From positions 62,001 through 126,000 of IMG/VR virus record IMGVR_UViG_3300030419_008158: a stretch of DNA of 64,000 bases. One strand, given 5' to 3'. This document shows positions 1,355-63,021 of this stretch, piece after piece; the stretch's first letter is position 1; each line of letters begins with the position of its first letter. The translations under genes were made by a program, and so were the position numbers. The notes under the pieces are model-generated. The model was not told the DNA's origin. It ran no database searches and worked only from the letters and a program-made list of their open reading frames with translations.

Positions 1355-1363
1355 CTAAATATC
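1355..1363 (-). promoter_or_regulatory. Putative late promoter motif GATATTTAG upstream of tape measure gene
   Basis: Recurring intergenic ATAnTTA motif, 5 nt upstream of ATG 1349. Confidence 0.6.
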
Positions 1364-1374
1364 TTAAAGTGAAA

Positions 1375-1644
1375 CTAGGTGAAACGTCTTAGTTTGGCAG
1401 GTACCTGGTCTCTTTGGAACCCGGACATGGCTCTTGAAGCTGAATCGTTGGAGTGGGCTGCTCTAGACTGTCCCCTAGCTGAGTCCATTTCTTTTACGAG
1501 GCGCTCTATAAACCACTCTCTTTGCCAGACTGGTAAATTCATGCACTCTGAGTATGTAAAGCCCATATAGTACATGAGTGTAAAAGTGGGCTCAAGAATA
1601 AATTGTTTGTCGTTAGGCGTCAGGCCAAAAAAAGCTAGCGCCAA
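1375..1644 (-). CDS. Tail assembly chaperone, T4 gp51-like / lambda gpT-like; possibly made as a frameshift fusion
   Basis: FTLMYYMGFTYSECMNLPVWQREWFIERL resembles the gp51-type motif (F.LM...K.S..E..NM.PWER). Overlaps the upstream gene by 32 nt across a T7 run; TTG start. Confidence 0.7.
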   Translation of the reverse strand: MALAFFGLTPNDKQFILEPTFTLMYYMGFTYSECMNLPVWQREWFIERLVKEMDSARGQSRAAHSNDSASRAMSGFQRDQVPAKLRRFT

Positions 1645-2467
1645 TAGGCAAACTCACCTCCGATTGCTCGTAACAGTGATCACATGTCATCCATGCCTTC
1701 ATTTCAATGCCTGGCTCGTTATCATCCATAAACTTTCTAAGAGAACGGCTATCTTTAGCAGGCATATTTCTAACAAACAAAGAAATTTTATTTTTATCTT
1801 CGATTCCATCGATTGAAATGATTGAATGCAAGAGACGACTAGTAACAATATTGTCCACATCTCCACCGAGCTTCTTTTTCTTTCGTCGGTCTGACTCAGT
1901 GCTCATATTGGTCTCGTCTTTGCCTGTTAAGAATCTAAAAACAACTTTCTTTTTTGAAATTGGAAGTTCATACTCGAAAGCATTTTCTCCCGGACTTATT
2001 GGGTCTATAGCAAGCCTTTTTATAGGTAGTTCTGAAAGTTGAAATTCAGGACTATTCTTCTCATCGCATTCAGGACAGTTAACTTCTACTTTATATTCTG
2101 ATCCATAGCCCGTAATTCTAATTGCAGTCATAAGAGCATTTCTGTCTCCAGAAATCAGCTTTTCGACGTCTATTGATTTATCCACTATGCAAGACCTTAG
2201 AAGTTCGCTAATTACTGTTCCCTTCTTGATCAAAGCCCGAGAAGTCAAAATATCCTCTTCACGAGCTGTCATTGCTCTAATTTCAATAGTTTCTTTGTTG
2301 TAAGATGAACTATCAGATGAATATATTTTTCCCTCTGATGGAAGAGGGACAGACTCGACAGGGACTTCCATGCCAAAATCATCTTTCATCACATTTCGTG
2401 TTGAAAATCCTTGTGCACTGGCCTGTTGTGCTGTAAATACTGAATTTCCGTCTCTATTGTCGCTCAC
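1613..2467 (-). CDS. T4 gp26-like baseplate hub / tail assembly chaperone
   Basis: VPLPSEGK, RAMTAREEDIL, GDRNALMTAIRITGYG, CPEC and CDHC zinc motifs and C-terminal FFWP. AGGAG RBS before the GTG start. Confidence 0.8.
   Translation of the reverse strand: MSDNRDGNSVFTAQQASAQGFSTRNVMKDDFGMEVPVESVPLPSEGKIYSSDSSSYNKETIEIRAMTAREEDILTSRALIKKGTVISELLRSCIVDKSIDVEKLISGDRNALMTAIRITGYGSEYKVEVNCPECDEKNSPEFQLSELPIKRLAIDPISPGENAFEYELPISKKKVVFRFLTGKDETNMSTESDRRKKKKLGGDVDNIVTSRLLHSIISIDGIEDKNKISLFVRNMPAKDSRSLRKFMDDNEPGIEMKAWMTCDHCYEQSEVSLPIGASFFWPDA
1627..1633 (-). other. Candidate programmed ribosomal frameshift site (U7)
   Basis: Minus strand reads AGC TTT TTT TGG in the upstream frame and GCT TTT TTT GGC in the downstream frame, at the classic chaperone position between tail tube and tape measure genes. 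Confidence 0.55.
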
Positions 2468-2489
2468 GTTATCTCCTGTTAGTTACTAA

Positions 2490-2496
2490 TAGGTAT
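2490..2496 (-). promoter_or_regulatory. Variant late promoter motif (ATACCTA)
   Basis: One mismatch to ATAnTTA, between the tube terminator and the chaperone RBS. Confidence 0.35.
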
Positions 2497-2530
2497 AGCA
2501 GTCCTATTGTTTGATTGTCGGCAAAAGTGT

Positions 2531-2566
2531 AAAAAAAAAGGGCTTCGAAAAATTCGAAGCCCTTTT
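2531..2566 (-). terminator. Rho-independent terminator after tail tube gene
   Basis: Perfect stem AAAAGGGCTTCGAA/TTCGAAGCCCTTTT with a 3-nt loop, running into T9 on the minus strand. Confidence 0.9.
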
Positions 2567-2584
2567 GCACAGCAATGTTTGCTT

Positions 2585-3073
2585 TTAGTATTGCAGTACG
2601 CAGTTGTCAAAACGAATTGTAAGAGAAATCTCTGTGGGCTCAGATGTTCCGTAATCAAGCGAACCAAAGTCGGCAGCTGTCAAGAATCCACCCTTAATGT
2701 CCCAGAGCTCTACAACCGTTCCAATTGGATCAAGCATCTTGAGCTGAATGTCTCTTTTATAAAAATCCGCGTAGCCGGCGCGGCCCGAGACTGATTCGAA
2801 ATGTGTTCTTATCCATTCCATGACCTGCTGCGCACCAGACGGAGCGATAGGGTCGTGAAGTGTAACGGACAACGTTTCAAAAGATGCCTTACCAGCGACA
2901 AAGCGCTTGTGGTTAATATACGGAATCTCAATTTCTTCAATTGAAACATTGGGACGAGATGCCGTCTTTACGATAAAAGCGTCAATACCCTCGATAGCAA
3001 GAACCCACCTAAACTGTCTTTTGGGCTCAAACTTGTTGGGTAGCATATCTGTAACTGCGAGTGTTTCTGCCAT
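2585..3073 (-). CDS. gp19: Tail tube protein (T4 gp19-like)
   Basis: FEPKRQFRW, RPNVSIEEIEIPYIN, VMEW and YKRDIQLKMLDP..VVELW motifs; 162 aa; follows the sheath genes. Confidence 0.92.
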   Translation of the reverse strand: MAETLAVTDMLPNKFEPKRQFRWVLAIEGIDAFIVKTASRPNVSIEEIEIPYINHKRFVAGKASFETLSVTLHDPIAPSGAQQVMEWIRTHFESVSGRAGYADFYKRDIQLKMLDPIGTVVELWDIKGGFLTAADFGSLDYGTSEPTEISLTIRFDNCVLQY

Positions 3074-3095
3074 TTTAATCTCCTAGCTGTGCATA

Positions 3096-3103
3096 TAAGT
3101 ATG
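3096..3103 (-). promoter_or_regulatory. Putative late promoter motif CATACTTA upstream of tail tube
   Basis: ATAnTTA motif in the 42-nt gap, followed by AGGAG RBS. Confidence 0.55.
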
Positions 3104-3115
3104 CAGTAATCAAAT

Positions 3116-6100
3116 TTAGATGCTGTTACTAACAACAAAATCAAGCGACACAAATTCAACCGATCTCGTGGGCTGCAAGAAGATGCGGCCACGAATGGTA
3201 TTGTTCTCGATATCCGCCTGTGTCGTGGTGGTAGTATCGATTATTACTCTAAATCTATCCAATCCGCCTTGTGACTGCACATCGGCGAGAATTGGCTGAA
3301 CTCTTGCTTGAAAAGCCGCAATTGTTGCTGCCTGGTTGGGCTCAAACAAGAATGTTCTAGCAACGTCTCTAACACGGCGTCTGACGTCGATGAGCAGCCT
3401 TCTAACATTAACTCTATCAAGAGCACTTTGTGCTGCCAGTAGAGTCTTCTGTCCAAAGACCGTTACACCGCCCGAAGATGTTACATCACCAATAATTGGG
3501 TTGATGTCTGCTGTGTAGAGATCGTCTCTGTTTTGCTGTAAAAGCTCAACTCCGGGATAAATTGCTGATGGGAGCACGCCTCTGGTAAAGCCAGCGGGTG
3601 CAAACCAAGGATGTGCCAAGGAATCGTTGAGAGAGAATGCTCCCAAAACGACCGCCGTAGCAGGTGCTTTTACATTTGTTCTTGTTGCGGGATCTGCTAC
3701 AACAACATCAGGATAATAAGCAGCTGCAAATGAAGAGTCAAGTGCACGTCCCGAAAATCTATTTATTGTATTTGCAACGCTTGGAATCTGCAAAGAGGAA
3801 GTTACAAAAGTATCAACTTCATCCTTTTCTTCTACATCCATCAGGAAGAGAGCGTCGAATCTTCGCTCTGTGGCTTCCATCGCGTAGTCTGTAACTGCTG
3901 GGTGTCTAATTCCCGGTATTGCCAGGAGCTGTACATCTACATCTTGCTTTGCTTCCATCAAGTCCATGGCTTTTCTATAAGCTGCAACCGTTGGACCAGA
4001 TTTTCCTCCCTGGTTTGTGTCTGTCATTTCTCTTCTAACAGCTGCATCGCTCAGCTTAGCTTTGTCGCTATTGAAGACATTGACTCCGTCCCATCCTCCA
4101 ATCATCGGAAGTGTAAACTTGAGATATTTTTGTGTGGGAACATGCGAGAAATCTTTTGAAGGATCCAAGAATCGAGATCCGATGCCGGCGGTGCCGTCTC
4201 TGTTTGTAAGAGTAGTTGCCGCAACTCCGTTTCTCTGGTACTTGGCAGCTGCCCATTGTTGTGGGTCTGGCCTATCATTTGATCCAGTAATAACCTCGAC
4301 TCTCTCTAGAGAAAAGAAGTTGTTATTGAATTTGTCAGCGTCAAGAACGGATCCAGCAACATCAGCTGTCCCCTCGTTAGACCCTACCCACGGATTCTCG
4401 TTGACCGTGTGGAAATTTGGGAACCACTTAGCAAACGATAGGAGCGAAGTATCGATCTTTTCGTTGGCGTTGGGGCGAGCGATGCTGGTCTTGTTTTCAA
4501 ACTGGACACCCCACGTAAAGTCTACCTTTACATTTTTCCGTGGAGACACACCCACTGCGATGTTTTCTCTCATTGGAATTGGAGGCTGTACGACTCTTGC
4601 CAGCTCATCACCTGAAATGCCTACATCATCTGTAATTGCTTGAGTTGAGTAAAGTCCTGTCAAAATGGAAGTCTTGTCAGACGTTCCAGATGTCACTAGG
4701 TGGTGTACTCCTCTAAATCCTGTTGGGAGAGCAGACGCATCAACTGCACCATTCTTTAACTCAGAGCTTATTTCAACTCTAACAAAGTTTGAAACATTAG
4801 CATAGTCGCCCTCTACAACGACTTTTTGAGCTCCGCTGGACGCATCAAAGTCAAAGAATGTATTTCTATCTCCGATTCGCTTAGCAATATAGTTGTCACT
4901 TGTAAGATCAAGTGAGCACCCTCTGAAGGATTCTACTACTTGAGGATTCAAATCATTGTCGAGGAAACGTCTCACTAGAACATCAAATGTTCCATATTTG
5001 TTGTTAGCTTTGCTTGATGCTTTGACATTTTCAATTGTGATCTTAAATTCACCAGAACCAATTGATCCGTCAGACAGCGTGTGGAATCTAAACAGATTTG
5101 TATTTCGTGCACCAAACTTTTGAGAAACAATAAAGGGAGAAAATGCTGCACTAAATCTATCTTCCCAGTTTTCAAAGTTTGGAGTTCCAACTTTTGATGC
5201 TGTTGTAGTAGTGCCTGTGTTTCTCGCCTGTGAACCTGTAAGGAGCATGACTGCCTCTTCCAGATTGGAACGCGCTCCACCCGATACACCGCCTGTTCTT
5301 GCATCTCCGCATAAGTCAGTGATAACATTAGTTCCTGTTACAACTGCCAAGTTTGTGCTAACATCGTAATGTGCATACAAGTAGTGACCAGCATCCTGAA
5401 TTTTCTTAGGATCTGTGTTGAAGACATTGACGAAGTAGTTCGGTGCAGCCGGGTCCATAGAAGCGGTCAGAACATTGTTGTATTGGTCGTTCTTCTTAAG
5501 ACCGTTGACAAGCATCACGAACTGATTTGTGCTTGTGTTGATCGATCCTATCGGTGCACCGGCGTTCTCGGAAGCAGTAAACACCAAGCTTGCTGCCCTA
5601 TCGTCTGCGACAGCATTGTTGGGCTCAAGCGTTGAACTTAGCCCCAAAACCACTCCGGAAGGCGCCATAAGCACACCTCGAAGAATTGGGTGAGCTATGT
5701 TCTGTCCAGATGTCTGTATGCCTGCTTCACTAAAGATCGTAGATCCGGCTGATTCTGACATAAGAGTGACAAGCATGTGTGTTCTACCAAGGATGCTGTT
5801 TCCATCGTCACCTCCGGAAAAGTTTGATTCCGTGATACCGCCGTTTATCGTCAGGCGATCAGCATCTCCATTTGTGACTGCTGATATTGTTGTGTTGCCA
5901 AGTCGACCTGACGTTACTTGAGCTACCGTAATAGTGTCATCAGTTGCCGTAGTTGTAGACAAAGTTGCAGTCATTCGTCCGCTGTGACCAAGCGAGGACT
6001 CGATAGCAGCTTTGATTTGTGCTGCAATTGTGCCTTCGGAGCTTAATCCCTTGATGTCTGCAAGAATTGAAACCCCGTCTGAGCTCGTATCGCCTGTCTC

Positions 6101-6643
6101 ATAGGAATCAGCTAGCGCGTCGTGAGTCTGAAATTGCCTGCTTGTACCATCTGAGGAGACCAGGGTGAATTTCATGTCTCGTAGCTGTGCTGGGTTGGAT
6201 GTCTTTACAATTATTGTTGCCGTAGCAGCTGTACCAGCTGCTGTGATTGCACCAGCTTTTTCGTTGTTCCCTAGAAGACCGTTGGCTTGCGGGAGTCTAT
6301 CACCGACAACAAAGCCTGCGTTGTTTACACGACCCGCATTGTCACCTGTTGATTTTCTGGCTGTTCCGTCTCCGGCGCCTAGAACACGAACGTAAGTACC
6401 TGCCCCTGCGTTTCTAAGCCACTCTCGCATAGCGATTGGGCCAAATTTTTCCCCATCAGAGTTTCCAAAGACAGAGATGAAGTCTTGGAAGGTTGCAACA
6501 GTAACTGGAACGAATGCAGGACCTCTAACAGCGGTTCCTACCACACCAGCCGGTATGCCTGTTGGGGATATCTGTGTTGGACCCGAAAGATCAATCTCCC
6601 GGGTTACCACGCCTGGGCTAACTGGAAATGTTAACTCTGCCAT
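3116..6643 (-). CDS. gp18: Tail sheath protein, paralog 2 (gp18-like)
   Basis: N-terminal SPGVVTREIDLS and GPAFVP; C-terminal PWFAPAGFTRG, INPI, FGQKTL, ALDRVNVRRLL and FEPN. Confidence 0.95.
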   Translation of the reverse strand: MAELTFPVSPGVVTREIDLSGPTQISPTGIPAGVVGTAVRGPAFVPVTVATFQDFISVFGNSDGEKFGPIAMREWLRNAGAGTYVRVLGAGDGTARKSTGDNAGRVNNAGFVVGDRLPQANGLLGNNEKAGAITAAGTAATATIIVKTSNPAQLRDMKFTLVSSDGTSRQFQTHDALADSYETGDTSSDGVSILADIKGLSSEGTIAAQIKAAIESSLGHSGRMTATLSTTTATDDTITVAQVTSGRLGNTTISAVTNGDADRLTINGGITESNFSGGDDGNSILGRTHMLVTLMSESAGSTIFSEAGIQTSGQNIAHPILRGVLMAPSGVVLGLSSTLEPNNAVADDRAASLVFTASENAGAPIGSINTSTNQFVMLVNGLKKNDQYNNVLTASMDPAAPNYFVNVFNTDPKKIQDAGHYLYAHYDVSTNLAVVTGTNVITDLCGDARTGGVSGGARSNLEEAVMLLTGSQARNTGTTTTASKVGTPNFENWEDRFSAAFSPFIVSQKFGARNTNLFRFHTLSDGSIGSGEFKITIENVKASSKANNKYGTFDVLVRRFLDNDLNPQVVESFRGCSLDLTSDNYIAKRIGDRNTFFDFDASSGAQKVVVEGDYANVSNFVRVEISSELKNGAVDASALPTGFRGVHHLVTSGTSDKTSILTGLYSTQAITDDVGISGDELARVVQPPIPMRENIAVGVSPRKNVKVDFTWGVQFENKTSIARPNANEKIDTSLLSFAKWFPNFHTVNENPWVGSNEGTADVAGSVLDADKFNNNFFSLERVEVITGSNDRPDPQQWAAAKYQRNGVAATTLTNRDGTAGIGSRFLDPSKDFSHVPTQKYLKFTLPMIGGWDGVNVFNSDKAKLSDAAVRREMTDTNQGGKSGPTVAAYRKAMDLMEAKQDVDVQLLAIPGIRHPAVTDYAMEATERRFDALFLMDVEEKDEVDTFVTSSLQIPSVANTINRFSGRALDSSFAAAYYPDVVVADPATRTNVKAPATAVVLGAFSLNDSLAHPWFAPAGFTRGVLPSAIYPGVELLQQNRDDLYTADINPIIGDVTSSGGVTVFGQKTLLAAQSALDRVNVRRLLIDVRRRVRDVARTFLFEPNQAATIAAFQARVQPILADVQSQGGLDRFRVIIDTTTTTQADIENNTIRGRIFLQPTRSVEFVSLDFVVSNSI

Positions 6644-6672
6644 TTTTTCTCCTGCTTGTATCTACTTATCAT

Positions 6673-9600
6673 TTACTCAAAGCTCACGCCACTGTTTGTG
6701 ATGATAAAGTCAATTGCTATAAACTCAACAGCACGGGTTGGAACAACCTGAATTGACGCCCTTAGTCTATTTTGTTCGACGTCAGCTGCTGTATTATTAG
6801 TATCGTCGCAAATGACCTTGAAGGCCTCGATTCCTTGTCCTGCCTGAACTGCTGTTAGCTGTTGAACTGTTTTGGCGACAAAATCAGCTCTTGTAGCTGC
6901 ATTATTCTGCTCAAACACGATGTTGTTTGCGATTCCTGTGACTCGTCGTTTGACGTCCAGAAGCATTCTTCTAACATTGATTCTGTCAAGTGCAGATTGT
7001 GCAACTTGAAGCGTCTTTTGACCAAAAATTACGAAGCCTGCGCGTGGGAACGTGGCAATTGGGTTGATTCTTGCATCGTATAGATCGTCTCGATCATTAG
7101 ATGAAAGTCTATTTTCAACATTTGACACGAAGGACAGCGCGCCTCGACTGAATCCGGCCGGGGCGAACCACACCTGCTTGTCTCTATCATTGAATCCAAG
7201 TGCTCCAACTGCGGCAATTGAAGGTGGTACTTCCACAACTCGATTATTAACATCATCATTGATATTGACATTCGGGAAGTATGTAGCAACGTAATTGTTG
7301 TCAATTGCTCTACTTTCAAACTGTGACACTGTTTTTGTCACATCAGATCTATTGCCTGAGTCATCGTATAGTCTGGTCGTATCTTTGTCGTACTCGGGTA
7401 TGTCCATGAGATACATAGCAAGCCCATACTTTTTGACCGCATCAGACGCGTGATCTGTGACGTAAGAATCTCTAGCTCCGGGCACTGCAAGAAGGTTAAT
7501 TCTTGTTGTGACTGGGTTTGTTATTATGTCAATTCCTTTTTGCAGTGAGTAGACCTGGTTGTTTCTTCGGCCAGCTCCTGCTGGGTTTTTCGGTGCCGTT
7601 CCATCACCACCCAAACCGATGACGGGATCAGTAACATTTTTTCCGCCAACGTCAGCAGACAATGCCCTGTCGCGGAAATAGAATTGATCCTCGTCAAGAA
7701 TATTAACTCCGTCGAACCCACCGTAGAAGATGTTTGTATACTTGGCAAACCCTGTAAAACGATTGAACAGAGCTGAAGACGTTGCAAGAAGCGACGCCAT
7801 TGTAATTCTATTGCTTCTAGTACCGTCATTGACTGTATACGTCGTTGAATTTGGTATTCCGTTTCTTACGTAAGCTGCTTCAAGTATATGTTCTGATGCT
7901 GTTCCTGTTACGCGAGTCGTTACTTCTGAAAGAGTGTCTGCATGATTGTACAGAGCGACTCGTGCTAAAGAAAACTTATTGCAGTTGAACACATCTTTTC
8001 CGGAGCCTGTAACCAGTGCATCCAGCTTCTCAATTCCCACGAATTTTGTGTATGCTCTAACAAGTGGGTTGATGCCTGCACCTTTGTTCGCATCTAAAGC
8101 AGCATTTGTCATTCCTAACACTGAGTCTGTGGAGGAAGACATCGGCGTGGGATTTGTTTTAACACCCCAATACAGACGACCGTCAACTCTTTCATCATCT
8201 CCAGGTTTACCTAAAAAGTCCGGGCTAGAGTTGACTGGCCCTTTTGTTACCTTGACTCTGTAAGGCATGGGAGGAACAATTGAAGCAGATGCGGGTATTC
8301 CGTCCACACCGTTTGTCAATCTTCTAGTAACTGCATCACCATATGTTGTTCCGTCAACTGTAAGAGCAGAAGTAGGCCCATCTGTAAGCGTGTCTGTCGT
8401 CTTGAGAGTGGGTATTCCACGATAGCCAAAGGGAAGTGCATCCTTGGGTGTAATTCCCTTGTCCGCTTGCTCGTTCATGACTATTCTAATTCTGGCAGAA
8501 ACATTTGGATATTTTCCTGTCACAACTAAGCGTCTTTCGTCCGGATCTTCCTGATCGAAATCGAATCTTACTTTTTTGTCTCCGATGAGACGTGCAACAT
8601 AACGATCTGATTTTGGATCGAGAGAGCAGTTTGGATATCTTTCAAGAATTGAAGAATTTCCGTCACTATCTTCAAAAGATCGAACTTGAACTTCAAATGA
8701 TCCAAAGGGCTGCTTTTCATTTGTCGAAGCTTTAAGACCCGCAATTGAAATTTTGAATTTTTCATTTGCATATGCACCATCATCTATACACTCAAAATGG
8801 AAAAGATCAAATTCTGCCTTGCCATAAGGTTGAGAAATGAATGATGTAGTTCTTGGTGTTGTATATCGAGTATCAAATCTACCGAACAGCACTTCAAACT
8901 GATTAGTCAAAGGATCATCACCGGAAGTGTTTTGTGTTCCGCTCAAAATTCTAACTGAAACATTGCCAGAATCTGATATCACTGGGGCTAAGTCGTGCTC
9001 GACAGCAAAATCTGCATAAAGCAAATGCTGCTCTTCTTGGAATCTCAGGGGATCTGTATTGAGAATTTTACCAATGTATGCTCCGTCGCTTGGATCTAGA
9101 GAGGCAGACAAAATACGAAGCCCTGCAAATGTCTCATCGGATCCGTATGTCTTGCCCTCAGAAGAGCTTAGAATTAGCTTGAAATATTTTGACTGCGTTA
9201 GAGAAGATCCACCAATTGCTCCAACTTTTGCTTCGTTTGTAGCCGCTGAAACATTAAAAAATGCATCGTTATCAAGCGTAAGAAGTCTTGTTCCTGAAGA
9301 TAGCAAAACCATCCCTCTGATCAAGCTCATATCATTTGCGCTTACGATGCTGTCGTTGTCTGTAAAGACTGGAAAACCGTTGGCTTCTTCTGCAGCTGCA
9401 TTGTGTCTAGCAGTAATAAACTGAACTGAGCCTTTTGAGGCCATTAGACCGTTTGCACCCGCTGCTGTATCAAGCGTCCCGGACACTATAAACCCTGCAT
9501 TCGAAACGACGCCTGCAGTTCGTGTATTCCCTATATGTGTTGCTGTTTCGTTTGCGCCAGCACCCAAAACTCTAACGTACGTGCAAGCTGTTCGCTGATC

Positions 9601-9822
9601 CAGCCATTTTTGCACTGCATACGGTCCAAATCTTTTGGGATCAAGTGATCCGAACTTTGTTTCAAAGTCTTCAAACGATCCAACTGTAACCGGTACGAAA
9701 GCGGGTCCCTTCTGCGCGGTGCCTACAATTCCCGCTGGAATTCCTGTTACCGACGTGGTTCGACCCGATAAATCGATTTCTTGATCGAAAAATCCTGGCG
9801 ATCTAAAAGTCTGCTCTGCCAT
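6673..9822 (-). CDS. gp18: Tail sheath protein, paralog 1 (gp18-like)
   Basis: SPGFFDQEIDLS, KGPAFVP, WFAPAGFSRG, RINPIATFP, FGQKTLQ and LDRINVRRML. Confidence 0.95.
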   Translation of the reverse strand: MAEQTFRSPGFFDQEIDLSGRTTSVTGIPAGIVGTAQKGPAFVPVTVGSFEDFETKFGSLDPKRFGPYAVQKWLDQRTACTYVRVLGAGANETATHIGNTRTAGVVSNAGFIVSGTLDTAAGANGLMASKGSVQFITARHNAAAEEANGFPVFTDNDSIVSANDMSLIRGMVLLSSGTRLLTLDNDAFFNVSAATNEAKVGAIGGSSLTQSKYFKLILSSSEGKTYGSDETFAGLRILSASLDPSDGAYIGKILNTDPLRFQEEQHLLYADFAVEHDLAPVISDSGNVSVRILSGTQNTSGDDPLTNQFEVLFGRFDTRYTTPRTTSFISQPYGKAEFDLFHFECIDDGAYANEKFKISIAGLKASTNEKQPFGSFEVQVRSFEDSDGNSSILERYPNCSLDPKSDRYVARLIGDKKVRFDFDQEDPDERRLVVTGKYPNVSARIRIVMNEQADKGITPKDALPFGYRGIPTLKTTDTLTDGPTSALTVDGTTYGDAVTRRLTNGVDGIPASASIVPPMPYRVKVTKGPVNSSPDFLGKPGDDERVDGRLYWGVKTNPTPMSSSTDSVLGMTNAALDANKGAGINPLVRAYTKFVGIEKLDALVTGSGKDVFNCNKFSLARVALYNHADTLSEVTTRVTGTASEHILEAAYVRNGIPNSTTYTVNDGTRSNRITMASLLATSSALFNRFTGFAKYTNIFYGGFDGVNILDEDQFYFRDRALSADVGGKNVTDPVIGLGGDGTAPKNPAGAGRRNNQVYSLQKGIDIITNPVTTRINLLAVPGARDSYVTDHASDAVKKYGLAMYLMDIPEYDKDTTRLYDDSGNRSDVTKTVSQFESRAIDNNYVATYFPNVNINDDVNNRVVEVPPSIAAVGALGFNDRDKQVWFAPAGFSRGALSFVSNVENRLSSNDRDDLYDARINPIATFPRAGFVIFGQKTLQVAQSALDRINVRRMLLDVKRRVTGIANNIVFEQNNAATRADFVAKTVQQLTAVQAGQGIEAFKVICDDTNNTAADVEQNRLRASIQVVPTRAVEFIAIDFIITNSGVSFE

Positions 9823-9857
9823 GTCTTCTCCTGTTCGTTACTTACGAAGCTCTGTTG

Positions 9858-9865
9858 TAAGTATC
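9858..9865 (-). promoter_or_regulatory. Putative late promoter motif GATACTTA upstream of the sheath genes
   Basis: ATAnTTA motif in the 104-nt intergenic gap. Confidence 0.55.
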
Positions 9866-9926
9866 TGTTTCAAAGTAAAATTGCACCAATTCGTGACTGT
9901 ATATTTTTTTTATCCACCACATTATC

Positions 9927-11261: not shown

Positions 11262-11264
11262 AAA

Positions 11265-11930: not shown

Positions 11931-11935
11931 TTACT

Positions 11936-13105: not shown

Positions 13106-13120
13106 TGGCAACTCCAATGA

Positions 13121-13129
13121 CTAAATATC
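13121..13129 (-). promoter_or_regulatory. Putative late promoter motif GATATTTAG upstream of neck genes
   Basis: Exact consensus copy in the intergenic gap. Confidence 0.6.
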
Positions 13130-13148
13130 TTTTAGAATGATTTTTGTA

Positions 13149-14029: not shown

Positions 14030-14308
14030 TTAAAGCAAGCTCTTTACTCGATCCCATACCCAGTGCCAACGTGAGGCGCCGAGTGCTTGCTCCCCTTCTT
14101 TAACGATCAGAAGTATGTCTTCAATATCTTTGGGTGAAAGAGTTCTATCAGCATCTCTAATTGCGCCTCTAACTAGATCCCAATCTGGACCCGCATCTTT
14201 TTTCGGAGCAGAAGCCCTTTCAGCTCCAGCAGCTTTCTTTGGTGCAGACTTCTTTGGTGCAGCCTTCTTGGGCGCTGCGGTCTTTTTTGTCTCTTTTTTC
14301 AATGCCAT
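14030..14308 (-). CDS. Small basic protein with histone H1-like Lys/Ala/Pro repeats
   Basis: KKTAAPKKAAPKKSAPKKAAG; GGAGG RBS before ATG 14308. Confidence 0.7.
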   Translation of the reverse strand: MALKKETKKTAAPKKAAPKKSAPKKAAGAERASAPKKDAGPDWDLVRGAIRDADRTLSPKDIEDILLIVKEGEQALGASRWHWVWDRVKSLL

Positions 14309-14340: not shown

Positions 14341-14349
14341 CTAAATATG
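14341..14349 (-). promoter_or_regulatory. Putative late promoter motif CATATTTAG for the three-gene PAS cassette
   Basis: Motif lies just downstream of the MCP terminator. Confidence 0.6.
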
Positions 14350-14385: not shown

Positions 14386-14418
14386 AAAAAAAAGGGCCCG
14401 GCCAAAATGACCGGGCCC
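14386..14418 (-). terminator. Rho-independent terminator after major capsid gene
   Basis: Minus strand GGGCCCGGTCA-TTT-TGGCCGGGCCC followed by T8. Confidence 0.9.
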
Positions 14419-18001: not shown

Positions 18002-18010
18002 CTAACTATC
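18002..18010 (-). promoter_or_regulatory. Putative late promoter motif GATAGTTAG for scaffold-MCP
   Basis: ATAnTTA copy overlapping the stop codon of the upstream gene. Confidence 0.45.
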
Positions 18011-19564: not shown

Positions 19565-19572
19565 TAAATATG
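19565..19572 (-). promoter_or_regulatory. Putative late promoter motif CATATTTA
   Basis: Consensus copy in the short intergenic gap. Confidence 0.55.
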
Positions 19573-19573
19573 C

Positions 19574-23773: not shown

Positions 23774-23782
23774 CTAAATATC
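23774..23782 (-). promoter_or_regulatory. Putative late promoter motif GATATTTAG upstream of portal
   Basis: Exact consensus followed by AAGGAG RBS. Confidence 0.6.
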
Positions 23783-25802: not shown

Positions 25803-25978
25803 TTCCTTGCAATTTTTGGTCGCCAACCACTGTTCCATTTATCAGCATTCGGGTAGTAGTAAGTATCTACACAATCAGAACATGCACCGTGTTCCAAGAA
25901 CGTATTCATGTCAACATCATCTTTAAGGACAATTTTGCACACTTGGCAAACGTGTGCCTTCTCATAGCGGTCTACCAC
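25799..25978 (-). CDS. Small zinc-finger protein (CxxC...CxxC, GWRP)
   Basis: CQVC...CSDC...WNSGWRP; probable GTG start at 25978 behind GAGGAAG. Confidence 0.65.
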   Translation of the reverse strand: MVDRYEKAHVCQVCKIVLKDDVDMNTFLEHGACSDCVDTYYYPNADKWNSGWRPKIARK

Positions 25979-35166: not shown

Positions 35167-35174
35167 TAAATATC
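35167..35174 (-). promoter_or_regulatory. Putative late promoter motif GATATTTA
   Basis: Consensus copy in the 45-nt intergenic gap. Confidence 0.55.
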
Positions 35175-40827: not shown

Positions 40828-40836
40828 CTAAATATT
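40828..40836 (-). promoter_or_regulatory. Possible late promoter motif AATATTTAG
   Basis: Overlaps the stop codon of the upstream gene, 7 nt before ATG 40820. Confidence 0.35.
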
Positions 40837-45038: not shown

Positions 45039-45047
45039 CTAATTATC
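45039..45047 (-). promoter_or_regulatory. Putative late promoter motif GATAATTAG
   Basis: ATAnTTA copy 8 nt upstream of ATG 45030. Confidence 0.5.
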
Positions 45048-56650: not shown

Positions 56651-58495
56651 TCACACAGCTGTTCCAATTACATCAAACGAAGGAAACTTTAGCTCGAATA
56701 TTGATCCTCGATCAGGTATTATCATACCTTTTGTTTGACTTTGTTTAAAATCAAATGTATTGGTGTTATAAACCCTATCTTCAACTTGCCCAAATCGAGG
56801 AAATACTTGAAGATCGACAAGTGAGATAACAAAATTAGAATTGATAATAATGTTTGTAATGTCATCAATAATAATTGGCTGATCTATGTTGAAGTATTCC
56901 TTTTCAAAAGCCAGACTAATTGCTGAATTTATCGATGTAAGCACTTGATTTTTGTTGGCATTTTCTGCTACAAAAACGCTGTACTTAATTCCAAAGTTTA
57001 TTACCTTTGCATCCAAAATATCTACGGCATCACCTACCAAGCGAAGCTCATTTAAATAAGTGCTTACATTTTTTTTCAAAGAGTCAGGGGCCACGCCTAG
57101 GCTTCCGTCTTCATTTTTTGAAAGCACATAAACAAGTGCAGAACCGGGATTTATAGGATTGGGTGCTATAGATGCCCTATAGATTCTTCCAAACTCACTA
57201 GGTAGCGTATATAGACGCGCCAGTAAATCTTCTTTTGACACCACTCTTCTTTGAGATTTTCTTGCTGAAGTGATGCGGGCTTTTAAGTCAGTTAGTGTTG
57301 GAGCTTCATCGCCTCCCCTAGCAGATTCTGGATTTGTCACTAAAACTGATTGTCTTACAGTGAGCGCATCGGTTGCACTAGGATTTCTTCTAAATGTTAG
57401 CGAAAGAACATCTACTGACTCGATTGCGTTGGACGAGACATTGTGAGACAATCCTCCCCCATGTCTATATCTGACTGTTAAGTTTGTTCCGCGAGGACTT
57501 ATACCTAAAGTTTGCGTCTCTAAAAGTGATGCTGGATCTATGCTAAACCTAGGTACAACAGTCTTTCCATACAAATTGAGAGAAAGCTCGCTGGGATCGG
57601 GTATAATGTCATCGTCAAGTGTTCCTGCATTGCCGCTTCCAAACCTTACAGTAGTCAATTGAGTTGTTGGGTCATAGCGTCGAGTAAATCGATAGGGTGC
57701 TGCTATGACTCTCATAAAATAGGGGACCTGTGATGCATCTGCTGTTTGATTTTTTGTCTTTAGAAATACAGTATCTTCGCTCAAAGATGACACTTCATAA
57801 TATGTGTTAGAATCAGTATCTTTGATAGACAGAATAGCAGTGATAAATTTTTGTGATAAAGTAAACTCTCTAAATGGTACAAATGTATCTGACACTGTTA
57901 TAGTTTCTGTCGTTTCCTCTCCTGAGACTGCTATTACGTCCCTGGAGACTTTAAATGATTTTGGTTGGCCATTGGCCTCTGTAGCAGATATTATGTAGCT
58001 GGCTAAAAAATTACCGTCTTCGTCTTGCTCAGAAAAATCTATGTCTTCTGTCGTGGTAAATGTTACACCTGTAAAAGAAGATGTTTGTGTTCCTGCCAAT
58101 ATTACGGGCATTGCGCTTCTTTTAGGCAAATACAGACCATTGACCTGCTCAGCAGGAACTGTTATTGTAAATTTTAAACTTACAACAGACGGAGATGCCC
58201 CAACTATGTCGACTCCCGCATTTCTTAGGTGTGTGATAATGCTGTCAGACTCAACTGCCCGCAGAGGGTCAAGTTCTCTGAAGGCGTGGTCTAAATAAAA
58301 ACTTAGTGAATCACCAACTGTTGCTGCAAAATCCAAAAACATTCCGCCAACTGATGGTTCAGAAAAGTCCTGGATTTTATCCGGAAAGTATGTTCTAGCT
58401 GTATCTAAAAGCTGCGCTCGTATTGTCTCAAAATCTCGAGCAATATACGTTCTATTTTGCTCTTTTTTTATCTTTTTCTTTACTTGAAATGCCAT
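56651..58495 (-). CDS. gp6: Baseplate wedge protein (T4 gp6 / baseplate J-like)
   Basis: RDFETIR, DFSEPSVG, GDSLSFYLD, FGSG, YRHGGG..NV, GGDEA and QRRVVSKED. Confidence 0.88.
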   Translation of the reverse strand: MAFQVKKKIKKEQNRTYIARDFETIRAQLLDTARTYFPDKIQDFSEPSVGGMFLDFAATVGDSLSFYLDHAFRELDPLRAVESDSIITHLRNAGVDIVGASPSVVSLKFTITVPAEQVNGLYLPKRSAMPVILAGTQTSSFTGVTFTTTEDIDFSEQDEDGNFLASYIISATEANGQPKSFKVSRDVIAVSGEETTETITVSDTFVPFREFTLSQKFITAILSIKDTDSNTYYEVSSLSEDTVFLKTKNQTADASQVPYFMRVIAAPYRFTRRYDPTTQLTTVRFGSGNAGTLDDDIIPDPSELSLNLYGKTVVPRFSIDPASLLETQTLGISPRGTNLTVRYRHGGGLSHNVSSNAIESVDVLSLTFRRNPSATDALTVRQSVLVTNPESARGGDEAPTLTDLKARITSARKSQRRVVSKEDLLARLYTLPSEFGRIYRASIAPNPINPGSALVYVLSKNEDGSLGVAPDSLKKNVSTYLNELRLVGDAVDILDAKVINFGIKYSVFVAENANKNQVLTSINSAISLAFEKEYFNIDQPIIIDDITNIIINSNFVISLVDLQVFPRFGQVEDRVYNTNTFDFKQSQTKGMIIPDRGSIFELKFPSFDVIGTAV

Positions 58496-58974
58496 TAGTT
58501 TGCCACCACGATTGAAACCTCTACTATCTGATTAGTTGCATTAATTGACGGGATCGAATACCCCACCTTTATTGTATTTACTATTACGTCTCCCTCCGGA
58601 GTTGCCGACGTTTCAAATGTTTCTAGCGAAACATAGGGCAAATATTTTGTAACAGCAGCAGAAATTCTTGCAAGTGCTTCTTCGATAACATCATTAGAAG
58701 TCATATCATAAGACAGCTCTTTTAAGTTCGCACCGTAGTCTGTAAGCATCAATCTCTCTCCGTGATTGGTGCTCAATAAATTTTTCATGTTATCCCGAAC
58801 TTGATCGACAAGTCTTTTTGACATCTTAAACATCGACTCTTCATCTTGCTCAAAAGAAATAGGCGTCAATATCCCTATGGGAAGACTTACAGCTGTGTCT
58901 TCCTTCATTGTCTGGACCTTACTTTGCAAGTTCCCAACAGATTTGAAATCGTATATTTTTTTAGCCTGTGCCAT
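58495..58974 (-). CDS. gp25: Baseplate wedge / sheath initiator (gp25-like)
   Basis: QVRDNMKNLLSTNHGERLMLTDYGANL and KYLPYV. Confidence 0.88.
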   Translation of the reverse strand: MAQAKKIYDFKSVGNLQSKVQTMKEDTAVSLPIGILTPISFEQDEESMFKMSKRLVDQVRDNMKNLLSTNHGERLMLTDYGANLKELSYDMTSNDVIEEALARISAAVTKYLPYVSLETFETSATPEGDVIVNTIKVGYSIPSINATNQIVEVSIVVAN

Positions 58975-58990: not shown

Positions 58991-58999
58991 CTAAATATC
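58991..58999 (-). promoter_or_regulatory. Putative late promoter motif GATATTTAG upstream of wedge genes
   Basis: Exact consensus followed by AGGA RBS. Confidence 0.6.
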
Positions 59000-61516: not shown

Positions 61517-61517
61517 T

Positions 61518-61895
61518 TTACCCCTCTATTTTCTCAAAAATATCGTCTGCATTGACCATTTTTTGAGCTTCTATTTCTTTTGTCACCAATCCGGCAAGAG
61601 CAAGGAGCTGATCGTTGGCTTTTGTCATTCTTTCTAGATACTTTACAATAATCGGCCCTAAAGTCGAATGTTCAGCAGCAGTTCCGCCCAGCTCCTTAAA
61701 TGCCTGCGTAAAAAGTGCGCTAGCGCAAACTCTGTCATTTTTTGCATTATTATAAATTTCTAGCCACAAAAACATTTTTCTCTGGTCTAGATTTTCTACA
61801 TTGTCTAAAATCTCTTCAAACTCTGTTATTTTTTTATTTGCATCTTTGTCTGATTCCAGAAGTTTTTCGATTTTTTTTACATCTTGTGCTTTCAT
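61518..61895 (-). CDS. Hypothetical helical protein
   Basis: EIYNNAKNDR, GPIIVKYLE and KANDQLLALA. Confidence 0.65.
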   Translation of the reverse strand: MKAQDVKKIEKLLESDKDANKKITEFEEILDNVENLDQRKMFLWLEIYNNAKNDRVCASALFTQAFKELGGTAAEHSTLGPIIVKYLERMTKANDQLLALAGLVTKEIEAQKMVNADDIFEKIEG

Positions 61896-61903
61896 TTTCA
61901 AAC

Positions 61904-62278
61904 CTATCTATAGTTGCGCCAATTCCACAAAGGGCGCTTTGACAAATAAGTTGTTTTTCTCTGATTGTCGTATGCTTCCTTTTCAAAGGGATTTTGATTG
62001 TACCCTTCTACAAAACTTCTGTGCTTTAGAGAACCCCACAGAAAATAAAAAGTGTAGACAAGCCAGTGAAAAAGAAACAACATCTCAATTTGCTGAATGT
62101 AATGAATCGTCTCATGGCGCTTTGATGTCTTTGACAAAGACCCTCTAGAAAAAACAAAGCACAAAATATTAACTGCTCCAATTTCAATCGGTGACACCTT
62201 TGAAAGCCAAATCGGCACCTTGCTGTTCTCAAAAATCCACGGCGTTCTTCTTGAAAGCCACTTTCTTATGACGGACAT
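61904..62278 (-). CDS. Small zincin-like HExxH protein with hydrophobic segment
   Basis: RHETIHYIQQ.E, a hydrophobic helix and NPFEKEAY (third ligand candidate). Confidence 0.65.
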   Translation of the reverse strand: MSVIRKWLSRRTPWIFENSKVPIWLSKVSPIEIGAVNILCFVFSRGSLSKTSKRHETIHYIQQIEMLFLFHWLVYTFYFLWGSLKHRSFVEGYNQNPFEKEAYDNQRKTTYLSKRPLWNWRNYR

Positions 62279-63021
62279 TATAGACCTCCTTTTTCTTTTT
62301 CTTCCACCACTAATCTAGAATAAATCTTTCTTATTTTGCTCATTGATTTTGTCAAGTGCTTTTTTTCCAAACCGGAAATCTCGCACAAGTAAATGTAAAT
62401 CGACTGTTTATTGATAAAATCAAGCTCTTGAGCATTATCAAACAATTTTTCAACTGCACTAATTGTAATCAGGTCTCTATCGTCAGATAGATGCTCTCTT
62501 ACTTTCTTAACTCTAGCTATGTTTTCAGCTCTATTTTCACTGTTAATGATTAGCTCTTCTGTTGACGGAAGCTCAACATATCTATCAATTTGCTGCTTTA
62601 TCAGAGAATCGCCCTTGCGTGACGTTACTTCGTCCAAATAAACGTGCTTGAAATACTTTTTTCTATGACTATTTGTCGTATTTATTAGAAAGTTTTTAGC
62701 AACTACATTGAAATAGCTGAATGCTTTGGACCCTTTGGCTGGGTCCCACTTATGAAGTGACTTATAAAGAAAAAAGCAACCCTCCTCTATGAGTTCTTGT
62801 GTGTTCATAAGCGGAGACTTAAATCCGTAGACGTAGATCAGACTTTCGACCAATTTTTTCATTGCTGGAAGAATTTCCTGACCGTATACTTGTTCTCTCT
62901 CTTTTTTCTCTTCAGATGTCAGAAACTTTACAATTGAAACTTCTGTATCTTTGGTAAAATACATCACACTTTTTTGACCAGGGCGCCTCTTTATTCTTTT
63001 TCTGCCTTTTTTTGCCGCCAT
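62278..63021 (-). CDS. Phage sigma factor (T4 gp55-like, probably late transcription)
   Basis: N-terminal YF, ELIEEG..FL...KWDPAKGSKAFSYFNVVAKN (sigma region 2-like) and a C-terminal HTH-like segment. Confidence 0.65.
   Translation of the reverse strand: MAAKKGRKRIKRRPGQKSVMYFTKDTEVSIVKFLTSEEKKEREQVYGQEILPAMKKLVESLIYVYGFKSPLMNTQELIEEGCFFLYKSLHKWDPAKGSKAFSYFNVVAKNFLINTTNSHRKKYFKHVYLDEVTSRKGDSLIKQQIDRYVELPSTEELIINSENRAENIARVKKVREHLSDDRDLITISAVEKLFDNAQELDFINKQSIYIYLCEISGLEKKHLTKSMSKIRKIYSRLVVEEKEKGGL

What the first reader, a model, noticed from the sequence alone, without database searches (positions are those of the whole stretch)
1355..63021. Recurring ATAnTTA late-promoter motif, the reverse complement of the T4 late core, with a candidate cognate sigma factor
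Seen: most of the larger intergenic gaps carry (G/C)ATA(T/C/A/G)TTA on the coding strand about 5-40 nt upstream of a start codon: 1355, 3096, 9858, 13121, 14341, 18002, 19565, 23774, 35167, 45039 and 58991, with variants at 2490, 6662 and 40828. No common -35 element is visible. Known: T4 late promoters are a -10-only TATAAATA read by gp55. Here the coding strand shows ATATTTA, the inverse of TAAATAT. Inference: the gp55-like ORF 62278-63021 reads a distinct -10-only promoter. Copies very close to the ATG (1355, 45039) with no obvious SD suggest leaderless or near-leaderless transcripts.
Basis: partly seen in the sequence, partly recalled or inferred. Interest (0 to 1): 0.65.

Follow-up and report, generated by a model that had tools for sequence, protein, structure and literature searches.

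The report
Variant T4-type late promoter motif
A short DNA word, ATAnTTA, sits just upstream of the virion and lysis genes of this 284-kb marine T4-related phage and its relatives; it is very probably their late promoter, a one-to-two-base variant of T4's TATAAATA, most likely read by a distant gp55-like sigma factor that the phage encodes.

Summary
All 11 listed sites carry (G/C)ATAnTTA on the coding (minus) strand. The total count is not above chance (15 found, 17.5 expected). The placement is: 12 of 17 coding-strand cores lie within 45 nt upstream of a start codon (P about 8e-14). ATATTTA is the top non-trivial intergenic 7-mer in the 284-kb genome and in 80 related marine loci (P about 5e-91). 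ATATTTAT tops the intergenic 8-mers in Microcystis phage Mel-JY01 and ranks among the top four in Flavobacterium phage immuto. Inside genes the word is about 4.5-fold depleted on both strands. No -35 element is conserved. Downstream genes encode tape measure, tube, sheath, neck, portal, baseplate and endolysins. This fits a -10-only late promoter.

In the same orientation it matches T4's ATAAATA at 5 of 7 positions, so the "reverse complement" reading is unnecessary. The sigma candidate has a sigma region-2 fold and a weak but consistent gp55-profile match. It also carries an extra C-terminal domain and lacks T4's clamp-binding tail. No transcription start data could be obtained. Verdict: a new variant of a known kind.

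The parts
1356..1362 (-). ATATTTA core (context AGATATTTAGTG). It lies 6 nt before the ATG at 1349 of a tape-measure-like gene of about 1843 aa. No Shine-Dalgarno sequence fits in between, so this is a leaderless candidate.
2490..2496 (-). Weak variant ATACCTA with one core mismatch, upstream of the baseplate-hub gene 1613-2467. It follows the strong terminator at 2536-2566. Its status as a promoter is uncertain.
   Evidence: ATAnCTA is not enriched in intergenic DNA
3096..3102 (-). ATACTTA core, 22 nt before the start of the tail-tube gene 2585-3073. An AGGAGA Shine-Dalgarno sequence lies in between.
6663..6669 (-). Variant ATAAGTA (G at core position 5) upstream of the tail-sheath gene 3116-6643. 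In the clade, ATATGTA is also enriched in intergenic DNA.
9858..9864 (-). ATACTTA core, 35 nt before the start of the second tail-sheath paralog 6673-9822.
13122..13128 (-). ATATTTA core, 16 nt before the start of the head-tail adaptor/neck gene 11936-13105.
14394..14418 (-). Intrinsic terminator (11-bp GC-rich stem followed by T8) directly after the major capsid gene 14443-16323 and about 45 nt upstream of the motif at 14342.
   Evidence: the same order of terminator, motif and gene is seen in 27 of 65 related loci
14342..14348 (-). ATATTTA core, 33 nt before the start of a small gene (about 14030-14308) downstream of the capsid gene.
18003..18009 (-). ATAGTTA core, 15 nt before the ATG at 17987 of a 538-aa gene that lies directly upstream of the capsid gene.
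19565..19571 (-). ATATTTA core, 31 nt before the start at 19533 of a small gene.
23775..23781 (-). ATATTTA core, 16 nt before the GTG start of the portal gene 21839-23758.
25860..25866 (-). Status uncertain.
35167..35173 (-). ATATTTA core, 30 nt before the start of gene 34441-35136 (unknown function).
40829..40835 (-). ATATTTA core preceded by A, 8 nt before the ATG of a 1288-aa gene 36954-40820. There is no room for a Shine-Dalgarno sequence.
45040..45046 (-). ATAATTA core, 9 nt before the ATG of gene 44071-45030. No Shine-Dalgarno sequence.
58992..58998 (-). ATATTTA core, 17 nt before the start of the gp25-like baseplate wedge gene 58495-58974.
62278..63021 (-). Candidate cognate sigma factor, 247 aa. 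Residues about 24-125 fold as a sigma region-2 domain. Residues about 148-247 form a helical C-terminal domain with only weak resemblance to sigma region 4. Remote member of the gp55 profile family.

Best explanation
ATAnTTA, in this genome usually (G/C)ATA(T/C)TTA(G/C), is the -10-like and only sequence element of the late promoters of this phage. The phage is a 284-kb marine relative of T4. In T4 numbering the motif would occupy about -12 to -6, and transcription would start 5-7 nt downstream of its last A. Most resulting mRNAs would have short leaders that carry the AGGAG ribosome-binding site; a few may be leaderless. The most likely reader is host RNA polymerase core carrying the phage sigma encoded at 62278-63021, a remote gp55-like protein whose region-2 domain would bind the motif.

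Shown here: the motif's strand-specific placement, its conservation across the clade, its avoidance inside genes, the late-gene identity of the downstream genes, the sigma region-2 fold, and the co-occurrence of the sigma family with the motif.

Inferred: promoter activity itself, the start-site position, and which sigma reads the motif.
For: Placement:
- 12 of 17 coding-strand cores in the window lie within 45 nt upstream of a start codon (P = 8e-14).
- ATATTTA is the top non-trivial intergenic 7-mer in the genome.
- The same holds in 80 related loci totalling 1.06 Mb: 106 intergenic against 93 in genes, with intergenic DNA 4.1% (P = 5e-91). All four ATAnTTA variants are enriched, while most of the one-base variants tested are not (ATATGTA and, with few copies, TATAAATA are exceptions).
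- ATATTTAT is the top intergenic 8-mer in the virion module of Microcystis phage Mel-JY01 and among the top four (P = 1.4e-10) in that of Flavobacterium phage immuto. These hosts belong to different phyla, which argues against recognition by a host-specific sigma.

Selection:
- Inside genes the word is depleted about 4.5-fold on both strands compared with synonymous-codon shuffles: 16 against 73 +/- 8 on the sense strand, 17 against 76 +/- 8 on the antisense strand. This is expected for a short, self-sufficient DNA signal. It is not expected for an RNA-level signal, because the antisense strand is hardly transcribed.

Promoter-like layout:
- No -35 information is present.
- The order terminator, motif, gene is recurrent.
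- The first Shine-Dalgarno-like tetramer begins abruptly 5-6 nt after the motif end, and start codons peak at +15/16. This fits a start site about 6 nt downstream, as for T4's TATAAATA at -13 to -6 (PMC1524935).

Genes served:
- Downstream genes encode tape measure, baseplate hub, tube, two sheath paralogs, neck, portal and gp25. Outside the window they include two endolysins and a third sheath paralog.
- Sigma-70-type promoters are not enriched in window 1-20000. A separate class, CGTGTAA-N17-TGnTATAAT, occupies other parts of the genome.

Sigma:
- 27 of 30 family members match PHROG_234, the family that T4 and S-RSM4 gp55 hit at 1e-69.
- Residues 24-125 superpose on sigma-E region 2 bound to -10 DNA (Z 9.5, rmsd 2.4 A over 91 residues).
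- Full-length homologs exist in immuto, Mel-JY01 and LR756508 (E 4e-34 to 3e-25). Immuto and Mel-JY01 have the motif but lack the second, sigma-70-like factor.
Against: - No transcription start data. The only RNA run held contigs of relatives within the capsid gene.
- The link to gp55 is remote: PHROG_234 E-values are about 1e-5, hhalign against T4 gp55 gives E 0.013, and the family profile does not find T4 or S-RSM4 gp55 at E <= 10.
- The protein has an extra C-terminal domain that might be sigma-4-like, yet no -35 element is conserved.
- No gp33 or gp45 homolog was detected.
- The window protein lacks the acidic/hydrophobic C-terminal tail that T4 gp55 uses to bind the sliding clamp.
- Some relatives with 35% identical sigma show little ATAnTTA enrichment (L024). 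LR756508 has a different top motif.
- A second phage sigma exists in the genome.
Confidence: 0.6

Rival explanations
1. The motif is a late promoter, but it is read by the other phage-encoded sigma: the 230-aa sigma-70-like protein with regions 1.2, 2 and 3 and a truncated region 4, at genome position about 3.1-3.8 kb. The gp55-like protein would then do something else.
For: A sigma without a functional region 4 would also be expected to read -10-only or extended -10 promoters. It is present in the window's genome and in three large marine relatives.
Against: Flavobacterium phage immuto and Microcystis phage Mel-JY01 have no Sigma70_r2 match at E <= 1. They still have strongly enriched intergenic ATATTTAT and a full-length homolog of the gp55-like protein. 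The sigma-70-like factor fits the other promoter class, TGnTATAAT, better: region 3 reads an extended -10 (the last point is general knowledge).
Confidence: 0.12
2. The motif is a promoter element read by the host's own sigma, possibly redirected by a phage appropriator as with T4 AsiA/MotA, and not by a phage sigma.
For: The motif is AT-rich like a -10 element. No biochemical link to any phage sigma has been made.
Against: The same core is used by phages of a Bacteroidota host, a cyanobacterial host and unknown marine hosts, whose primary-sigma promoters differ (general knowledge). The motif lacks the final T of TATAAT-type elements. Sigma-70-type promoters are not enriched in the virion module. 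A clear TGnTATAAT class exists elsewhere in the same genome.
Confidence: 0.1
3. The motif is not a promoter but another signal placed upstream of genes: an RNA processing or translational-operator site, or a DNA site for nicking, modification or restriction avoidance.
For: No start-site data exist. Depletion on both strands could also reflect avoidance of a nuclease target.
Against: An RNA signal would not be selected against on the untranscribed antisense strand. A nuclease or modification site would not be oriented or placed 13-37 nt before start codons and after terminators. The spacing to the start codon is variable, which does not suit a translational operator.
Confidence: 0.06
4. The pattern is a chance product of AT-rich intergenic sequence.
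For: The total count in the window is no higher than in shuffles (15 against 17.5).
Against: Placement P-values run from 1e-13 to 1e-91. Same-composition control words are 2-8 times commoner in genes. Most of the one-base variants tested lose the intergenic enrichment. The motif is not enriched in the cyanophage S-RSM4 control.
Confidence: 0.01

Closest known systems
T4-type late promoters read by gp55 (TATAAATA at -13 to -6; -13 often variable; Aeh1 variant CTAAATA)
   Same: A single short AT-rich -10-like element with no -35. It lies upstream of virion and lysis genes of a T4-related myovirus. It shares the same orientation and 5 of 7 core positions (ATAAATA against ATAnTTA). The inferred distance to the start site is similar. 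There is a precedent that a diverged gp55 goes with a diverged consensus (Aeh1; PMC1524935).
   Different: Position -8 is T, not A, and -9 is free. In the marine clade the canonical ATAAATA is only weakly enriched in intergenic DNA (19 against 63). Dependence on gp33 and the gp45 sliding clamp is unknown, and neither gene was found.
T4 gp55 late sigma (PHROG_234; 185 aa; sigma-2 mimic plus clamp-binding tail)
   Same: A sigma region-2-like N-terminal domain. A profile match spans most of PHROG_234 (positions 32-161 of 181). The protein is encoded by a T4-related phage with gp23-, gp20-, gp25-, gp46- and gp47-like genes.
   Different: The protein is 247 aa, with an extra helical C-terminal domain of about 100 aa. 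The match is E about 1e-5, against 1e-69 for true gp55. The window's protein has no SLDFLYE-type tail, although the 40-45% identical sister clade ends in ...DKYDLF or ...LIDFGIF.
Two-domain (group 4/ECF-like) sigma-70-family factors
   Same: The whole model aligns with sigma-H, sigma-E and sigma-70 chains across both domains (Z 8-11). Its size is similar to that of ECF sigmas.
   Different: No Pfam region-4 match. The C-terminal domain alone gives only Z 6.5 to a sigma-H structure, which is within the noise for helical domains. The promoters lack the -35 element that ECF sigmas need.
Bacillus phage SPO1 late promoters (gp33/gp34; CGTTAGA, about 18 nt, GATATT; from memory)
   Same: The window's sites often read GATATT at their 5' side.
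   Different: No -35-like element is conserved. The conserved core extends 3' to TTA. The phage is T4-related, not SPO1-related.

Membership tests
T4-type (gp55-dependent) late promoter | Consensus TATAAATA at -13 to -6 | tested here: not met
   The core here is ATAnTTA. It matches ATAAATA at 5 of 7 positions in the same orientation. Canonical ATAAATA is only weakly enriched in the clade (19 intergenic against 63 in genes, compared with 106 against 93 for ATATTTA).
T4-type (gp55-dependent) late promoter | No -35 element; the -10-like element alone carries the specificity | tested here: met
   Information content upstream of the core is at most 0.37 bit per position in 29 own sites and 238 clade sites.
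T4-type (gp55-dependent) late promoter | Located 5' of late (virion and lysis) genes | tested here: met
   Downstream genes: tape measure, hub, tube, sheath (three paralogs), neck, portal, gp25 and two endolysins. The other promoter class occupies separate regions of the genome.
T4-type (gp55-dependent) late promoter | Transcription starts about 6 nt downstream of the element, late in infection | not testable with these tools
   Only indirect evidence: Shine-Dalgarno-like tetramers begin abruptly 5-6 nt after the core. The RNA run gave only contigs of relatives.
T4-type (gp55-dependent) late promoter | Activation through gp33 and the gp45 sliding clamp | tested here: inconclusive
   No match to PF09116 or PF02916, to T4 gp33, or to S-RSM4 gp45 in the genome. 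Divergence could hide them.
gp55 late sigma family (PHROG_234) | Significant match to the family profile | tested here: inconclusive
   The window protein scores E 1.3e-5. 27 of 30 relatives match, best 8.8e-7. T4 and S-RSM4 gp55 score 1e-69. The reverse search with the family profile misses T4 and S-RSM4 gp55. hhalign against T4 gp55 gives E 0.013.
gp55 late sigma family (PHROG_234) | Sigma region-2-like domain that docks on the beta' coiled coil | tested here: met
   The fold is met: the AF2 model (pLDDT 79) at residues 24-125 aligns with sigma-E region 2 (4lup_A) at Z 9.5, rmsd 2.4 A over 91 residues. Docking on the polymerase was not tested.
gp55 late sigma family (PHROG_234) | About 170-185 aa with no further globular domain; region-4 function supplied by a separate gp33 | tested here: not met
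   The protein is 247 aa, with a confidently modelled four-helix C-terminal domain (pLDDT 85). Its best structural match is the C-terminal part of a sigma-H structure at Z 6.5, which is weak.
gp55 late sigma family (PHROG_234) | Acidic/hydrophobic C-terminal epitope that binds the sliding clamp (T4: SLDFLYEAND) | tested here: not met
   The window protein ends ...VVEEKEKGGL. The sister clade at 40-45% identity ends ...DKYDLF...LIDFGIF or ...IIDLL.
Sigma-70 family (Pfam Sigma70_r2) | Pfam region-2 match above the gathering score | tested here: inconclusive
   21.3 bits against a cut-off of 24. In the genome search it scored 23.7 bits. The structural match supports membership in the superfamily.
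SPO1-type late promoter | Bipartite: a -35-like CGTTAGA plus a GATATT -10 | tested here: not met
   No conserved upstream element.

The most novel reading that the evidence does not exclude
This widespread marine phage clade may use an 'unsplit' late sigma: a gp55-like region-2 domain fused to a C-terminal domain that does the job of T4's separate gp33 or of sigma region 4, binding the polymerase flap without reading DNA. In the window's subclade the clamp-binding tail has been lost, so late transcription from ATAnTTA would no longer be coupled to the sliding clamp and to DNA replication. A subset of late mRNAs (tape measure, and the genes at 40820 and 45030) would be leaderless.
Probability: 0.2. 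Interest if true: 0.7.

Novelty: new variant of a known kind. Interest (0 to 1): 0.5.

Why it matters
The late transcription system of T4 (gp55, gp33, sliding clamp, TATAAATA) is a textbook case, and its promoter is used to annotate T4-like phages. Here a large, uncultured marine clade uses a different consensus with a much-diverged sigma: 654 homologs of the sigma were found, on contigs up to 318 kb. At least two cultivated phages, on Flavobacterium and Microcystis, share both features. Late promoters of these phages would therefore be missed by TATAAATA searches. The motif gives a ready annotation rule for late genes in these genomes. The two cultivated relatives make the sigma-promoter pairing directly testable. 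The pairing also offers a natural experiment on how sigma region 2 changes its -10 specificity, and on whether clamp-coupled activation is ancestral or dispensable.

Tried and rejected
- Reads: one RNA metatranscriptome run and three other runs were laid on window 13650-19649 (6000 letters). Only short contigs at 90-95% identity within the capsid gene were found, so there was no information on starts or strand.
- Megablast of the window against the phage collection found no match.
- PDB sequence searches with the protein and with its family profile gave only weak RpoS/SigA region-2 hits (E 0.06 or worse) and did not find T4 gp55.
- Foldseek with the whole model returned only sigma factors at the top, all with E above 1e-3.
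- The C-terminal domain gave no significant Foldseek hit, no Pfam family and no similarity to T4 gp33.
- Searches for the gp45 clamp and for gp33 in the genome by Pfam, HMM and tblastn found nothing credible. A weak gp44-like hit near 168 kb led only to unannotated, PhoH, helicase and protease genes.
- SPO1-like bipartite promoter idea: rejected, because no upstream element is conserved.
- Bacteroidetes-type TAnnTTTG promoter: the motif does not fit it, and the same motif occurs in a cyanophage.
- A leaderless peak in the raw ATG offsets after the motif was not seen. Only individual cases based on open reading frames exist.
- The S-RSM4 control did not return a crisp ATAAATA top word in 41 kb. 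It serves only as a negative control for ATAnTTA.
- Literature searches for ATATTTA or ATATTTAT with promoter terms, and for Mel-JY01, found nothing. Papers that mention immuto deal with DNA modification or polymerases, judging by their titles and abstracts.
- The promoter that drives the sigma gene itself could not be identified, because the gene sits in a long, gap-free array of co-directional genes.
Full report
**Context.** The window is bases 62001-126000 of a single 284,429-bp viral contig with 41.7% G+C. A simple gene call gives about 376 genes, 358 of them on the minus strand. Only 1.9% of the window and 4.8% of the genome is intergenic. The capsid protein (window 14443-16323, minus strand) is gp23-like. 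Its nearest named relatives are an uncultured 484-kb phage (LR756508), Flavobacterium phage vB_FspM_immuto, Microcystis phage Mel-JY01 and Rhodothermus phage RM378, followed by T4-like cyanophages. Run metadata indicate a marine origin. The object is therefore a large, distant relative of T4.

**The observation.** On the coding (minus) strand all 11 listed sites read (G/C)ATAnTTA within 1 nt of the given coordinates.
- The variant at 40828 has a perfect ATATTTA core.
- The variants at 6662 (ATAAGTA) and 2490 (ATACCTA) each have one core mismatch.
- One further intergenic copy lies at 25860.

The total number of SATANTTA matches is not above chance: 15 against 17.5 +/- 4.1 in dinucleotide shuffles. 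What is exceptional is where they lie.
- 14 of 15 are on the coding strand.
- 12 of 17 coding-strand ATAnTTA cores lie 0-45 nt upstream of a start codon, a zone that makes up 4% of positions (P = 8e-14).
- Across the genome, ATATTTA is the most intergenic-enriched 7-mer after T-runs, ranking just ahead of the ribosome-binding-site words: 18 intergenic against 13 in genes (P = 1e-16). Its reverse complement is not enriched.

**Selection against the word inside genes.** Within coding sequence, leaving out the last 60 nt of each gene, ATAnTTA occurs 16 times on the sense strand and 17 times on the antisense strand. Shuffles that permute synonymous codons give 73 +/- 8 and 76 +/- 8. Words of the same composition occur 39-133 times. 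Avoidance on both strands, although essentially only one strand is transcribed, points to a signal that acts on DNA and is harmful when it appears in the wrong place. A short, self-sufficient promoter behaves this way. An RNA-level signal does not.

**Anatomy.**
- An alignment of 29 sites from this genome shows information only at -1 (G), the seven core positions (position 4 is T or C in this seed set) and +7 (G or C). Nothing resembles a -35 element.
- In 238 non-redundant intergenic sites from relatives the core is A-T-A-N-T-T-A, with all four bases accepted at N. The flanks carry at most 0.37 bit, a weak T preference 14-15 nt upstream that may come from terminator tails.
- Most of the single-base variants of the fixed positions that were tested lose the intergenic enrichment. 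The intergenic share is 0.02-0.21, against 0.45-0.53 for the four true variants. The exceptions are ATATGTA (0.40) and, with few copies, TATAAATA (0.43, 6 against 8).
- The distance from the motif end to the start codon is mostly 13-37 nt.
- The first Shine-Dalgarno-like tetramer begins abruptly 5-6 nt after the motif, and start codons peak at +15/16. The ribosome-binding site must lie within the transcript, so this lower bound fits a start about 6 nt after the motif. That is the geometry of T4's TATAAATA at -13 to -6 (PMC1524935).
- A strong intrinsic terminator follows the capsid gene (14394-14418), about 45 nt before the motif at 14342. The same order of terminator, motif and gene occurs behind the capsid gene in 27 of 65 related loci.

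**Genes served.**
- In the window the motif precedes genes for a tape-measure-like protein, the tail tube, two sheath paralogs, a neck/adaptor protein, the gene upstream of the capsid gene, the portal and the gp25-like baseplate wedge. The weak variant at 2490 precedes the baseplate hub.
- Outside the window the annotated targets are two endolysin-like genes, a third sheath paralog, two glycosyltransferases and a small endonuclease. The rest are unknown.
- Sigma-70-type promoters are not enriched in window 1-20000: 27 against 31 +/- 5.6.
- A different promoter-like class, CGTGTAA, about 17 nt, TGnTATAAT, is confined to 4-24 kb and 190-262 kb of the genome, while the ATAnTTA sites lie mostly elsewhere.

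The picture is a T4-like temporal programme with separate early/middle and late promoter classes.

**Conservation.**
- In 80 IMG/VR loci whose capsid proteins are 61-85% identical (1.06 Mb), ATATTTA is the top non-trivial intergenic 7-mer: 106 against 93 with 4.1% intergenic DNA (P = 5e-91). ATACTTA, ATAATTA and ATAGTTA follow.
- In the virion modules of the two cultivated relatives, ATATTTAT is the top intergenic 8-mer in Mel-JY01 (11 against 2) and among the top four in immuto (9 against 3, P = 1.4e-10). Immuto also has three intergenic copies of CTATTTATAAATA.
- The T4-like cyanophage S-RSM4 shows no enrichment of ATAnTTA.
- Enrichment is not uniform. One relative with a 35% identical sigma shows little of it (L024). 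LR756508 has a different top word, TAACTTAA.

**Relation to T4.** Read in the same orientation, ATAnTTA matches T4's ATAAATA (-12 to -6) at 5 of 7 positions. It differs at -8 (T instead of A) and is free at -9. Position -13 is already known to vary among T4-like phages. Phage Aeh1 has a divergent consensus, CTAAATA, together with a divergent gp55 (PMC1524935). The simplest reading is a further variant of the T4-type late promoter. The resemblance to the reverse complement is a by-product of a nearly palindromic AT-rich word.

**The sigma candidate (62278-63021, 247 aa).**
- Pfam Sigma70_r2 scores just below its cut-off (21.3 against 24 bits).
- PHROG_234 ('late sigma transcription factor') matches at E 1.3e-5 over profile positions 32-161 of 181. 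27 of 30 diverse homologs match it independently (best 8.8e-7). T4 and S-RSM4 gp55 hit the same family at 1e-69.
- The reverse search fails: the family profile does not find T4 or S-RSM4 gp55. hhalign against T4 gp55 is weak (E 0.013).
- An AlphaFold2 model (pLDDT 79) places residues 24-125 on sigma region 2. Against sigma-E region 2 bound to its -10 strand (4lup_A) it gives Z 9.5, rmsd 2.4 A over 91 residues. All 50 top-ranked entries listed (Z 8.2-10.8) are sigma factors.
- The C-terminal 100 residues form a confident four-helix domain (pLDDT 85). Its best match is the C-terminal part of a sigma-H structure, at only Z 6.5, with sigma region-4 entries near Z 5.4. This is within the noise for helical domains. 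No Pfam family matches it, and it shows no similarity to gp33.
- T4 gp55 ends in SLDFLYEAND, its clamp-binding epitope (PMC2988020). The window's protein ends ...EEKEKGGL. The 40-45% identical sister clade ends ...DKYDLF...LIDFGIF or ...IIDLL.
- No gp33 or gp45 homolog was detected.

The protein is therefore a sigma-family, remotely gp55-like factor with a different architecture.

**Which factor reads the motif.** The genome holds a second sigma gene outside the window, at about 3.1-3.8 kb. It encodes 230 aa with regions 1.2, 2 and 3 and a region 4 cut short after its first helix. The three large marine relatives have both sigmas. Immuto and Mel-JY01 have no Sigma70_r2 match at all, yet they keep a full-length homolog of the 247-aa protein (E 4e-34 and 3e-25) and the ATATTTAT motif. 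The evidence is correlative.

**Leaderless transcripts.** At 1356 the motif ends 6 nt before the ATG of the tape-measure-like gene, with no room for a ribosome-binding site. At 40829 and 45040 the gaps are 8 and 9 nt. About a dozen sites in the genome and its relatives have 5-6 nt to an ATG that opens a long reading frame. The raw distribution of ATG offsets has no peak there. Leaderless late mRNAs are plausible but unproven.

**What could not be done.** No raw RNA reads of this phage were available. The one RNA run held only contigs of relatives inside the capsid gene. No paper in the library mentions the motif.

**Verdict.** The promoter interpretation is strongly supported by placement, conservation and avoidance. 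The assignment to the gp55-like sigma is the best-supported option but rests on correlation. The 'reverse complement' and 'leaderless' parts are, respectively, unnecessary and unproven. This is a new variant of a known kind, of moderate interest.

Noticed in passing
outside the window: genome G000:C1 about 3131-3823 (L003:1132-1824, minus strand): A second phage sigma gene, 230 aa, with Pfam regions 1.2, 2 and 3. Region 4 is cut off after its first helix. It matches PHROG_351 and lies next to a Cpn60-like gene. Homologs of 239-262 aa exist in three large marine relatives, but none in immuto or Mel-JY01.
   Followed up: partly
outside the window: genome 4-24 kb and 190-262 kb (for example 258713, 262175, 196491, 195427): A second promoter-like class: CGTGTAA, about 17 nt, then TGnTATAAT (an extended -10). 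It is largely separate in location from the ATAnTTA sites. It may be an early/middle class, with the CGTGTAA box playing a MotA-box-like role or being read with the region-4-less sigma.
   Followed up: partly
window 3116-6643 and 6673-9822; genome 262399-265743: Three large tail-sheath paralogs (1175, 1049 and 1114 aa), two of them in tandem. Two are preceded by an exact ATAnTTA site and the third (3116-6643) by the one-mismatch variant ATAAGTA.
   Followed up: no
family of the protein at window 62278-63021 (proteins P0056-P0120): The sister clade at 40-45% identity ends in acidic/hydrophobic tails (...DKYDLF, ...LIDFGIF, ...IIDLL). These resemble the sliding-clamp-binding C-terminus of T4 gp55. 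The window's own subclade has lost this tail.
   Followed up: partly
L093 (LR756508, 151904-193517): This 484-kb uncultured phage has a 28% identical homolog of the sigma, but its top intergenic word is TAACTTAA(A), not ATAnTTA. Sigma and promoter may have changed together.
   Followed up: no
L001 (Flavobacterium phage immuto) 13706, 24405, 38455: Besides ATATTTAT, immuto has three intergenic copies of CTATTTATAAATA, which contains the exact T4 consensus TATAAATA. One lies upstream of the portal gene.
   Followed up: no
outside the window: genome about 186.3-189.5 kb: A cluster of small paralogous reading frames or N-termini with the repeated peptide KI(T/S)KRQLR(R/Q)IIKEE, lying in and between short genes.
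   Followed up: no
window 63310-63894 (and genome 126479-127699, 148121-150016): A GT4-type glycosyltransferase gene lies two genes upstream of the sigma gene, in the same co-directional array. Two more glycosyltransferase genes lie behind ATAnTTA sites. The relative immuto appears in a paper on 7-deazaguanine DNA modification in phages (PMC10516641, found; not read).
   Followed up: no
window 14443-16323: The gp23-like major capsid protein is 626 aa. tblastn matches to relatives come in two pieces covering 58-74% of it, which suggests a lineage-specific insertion.
   Followed up: no
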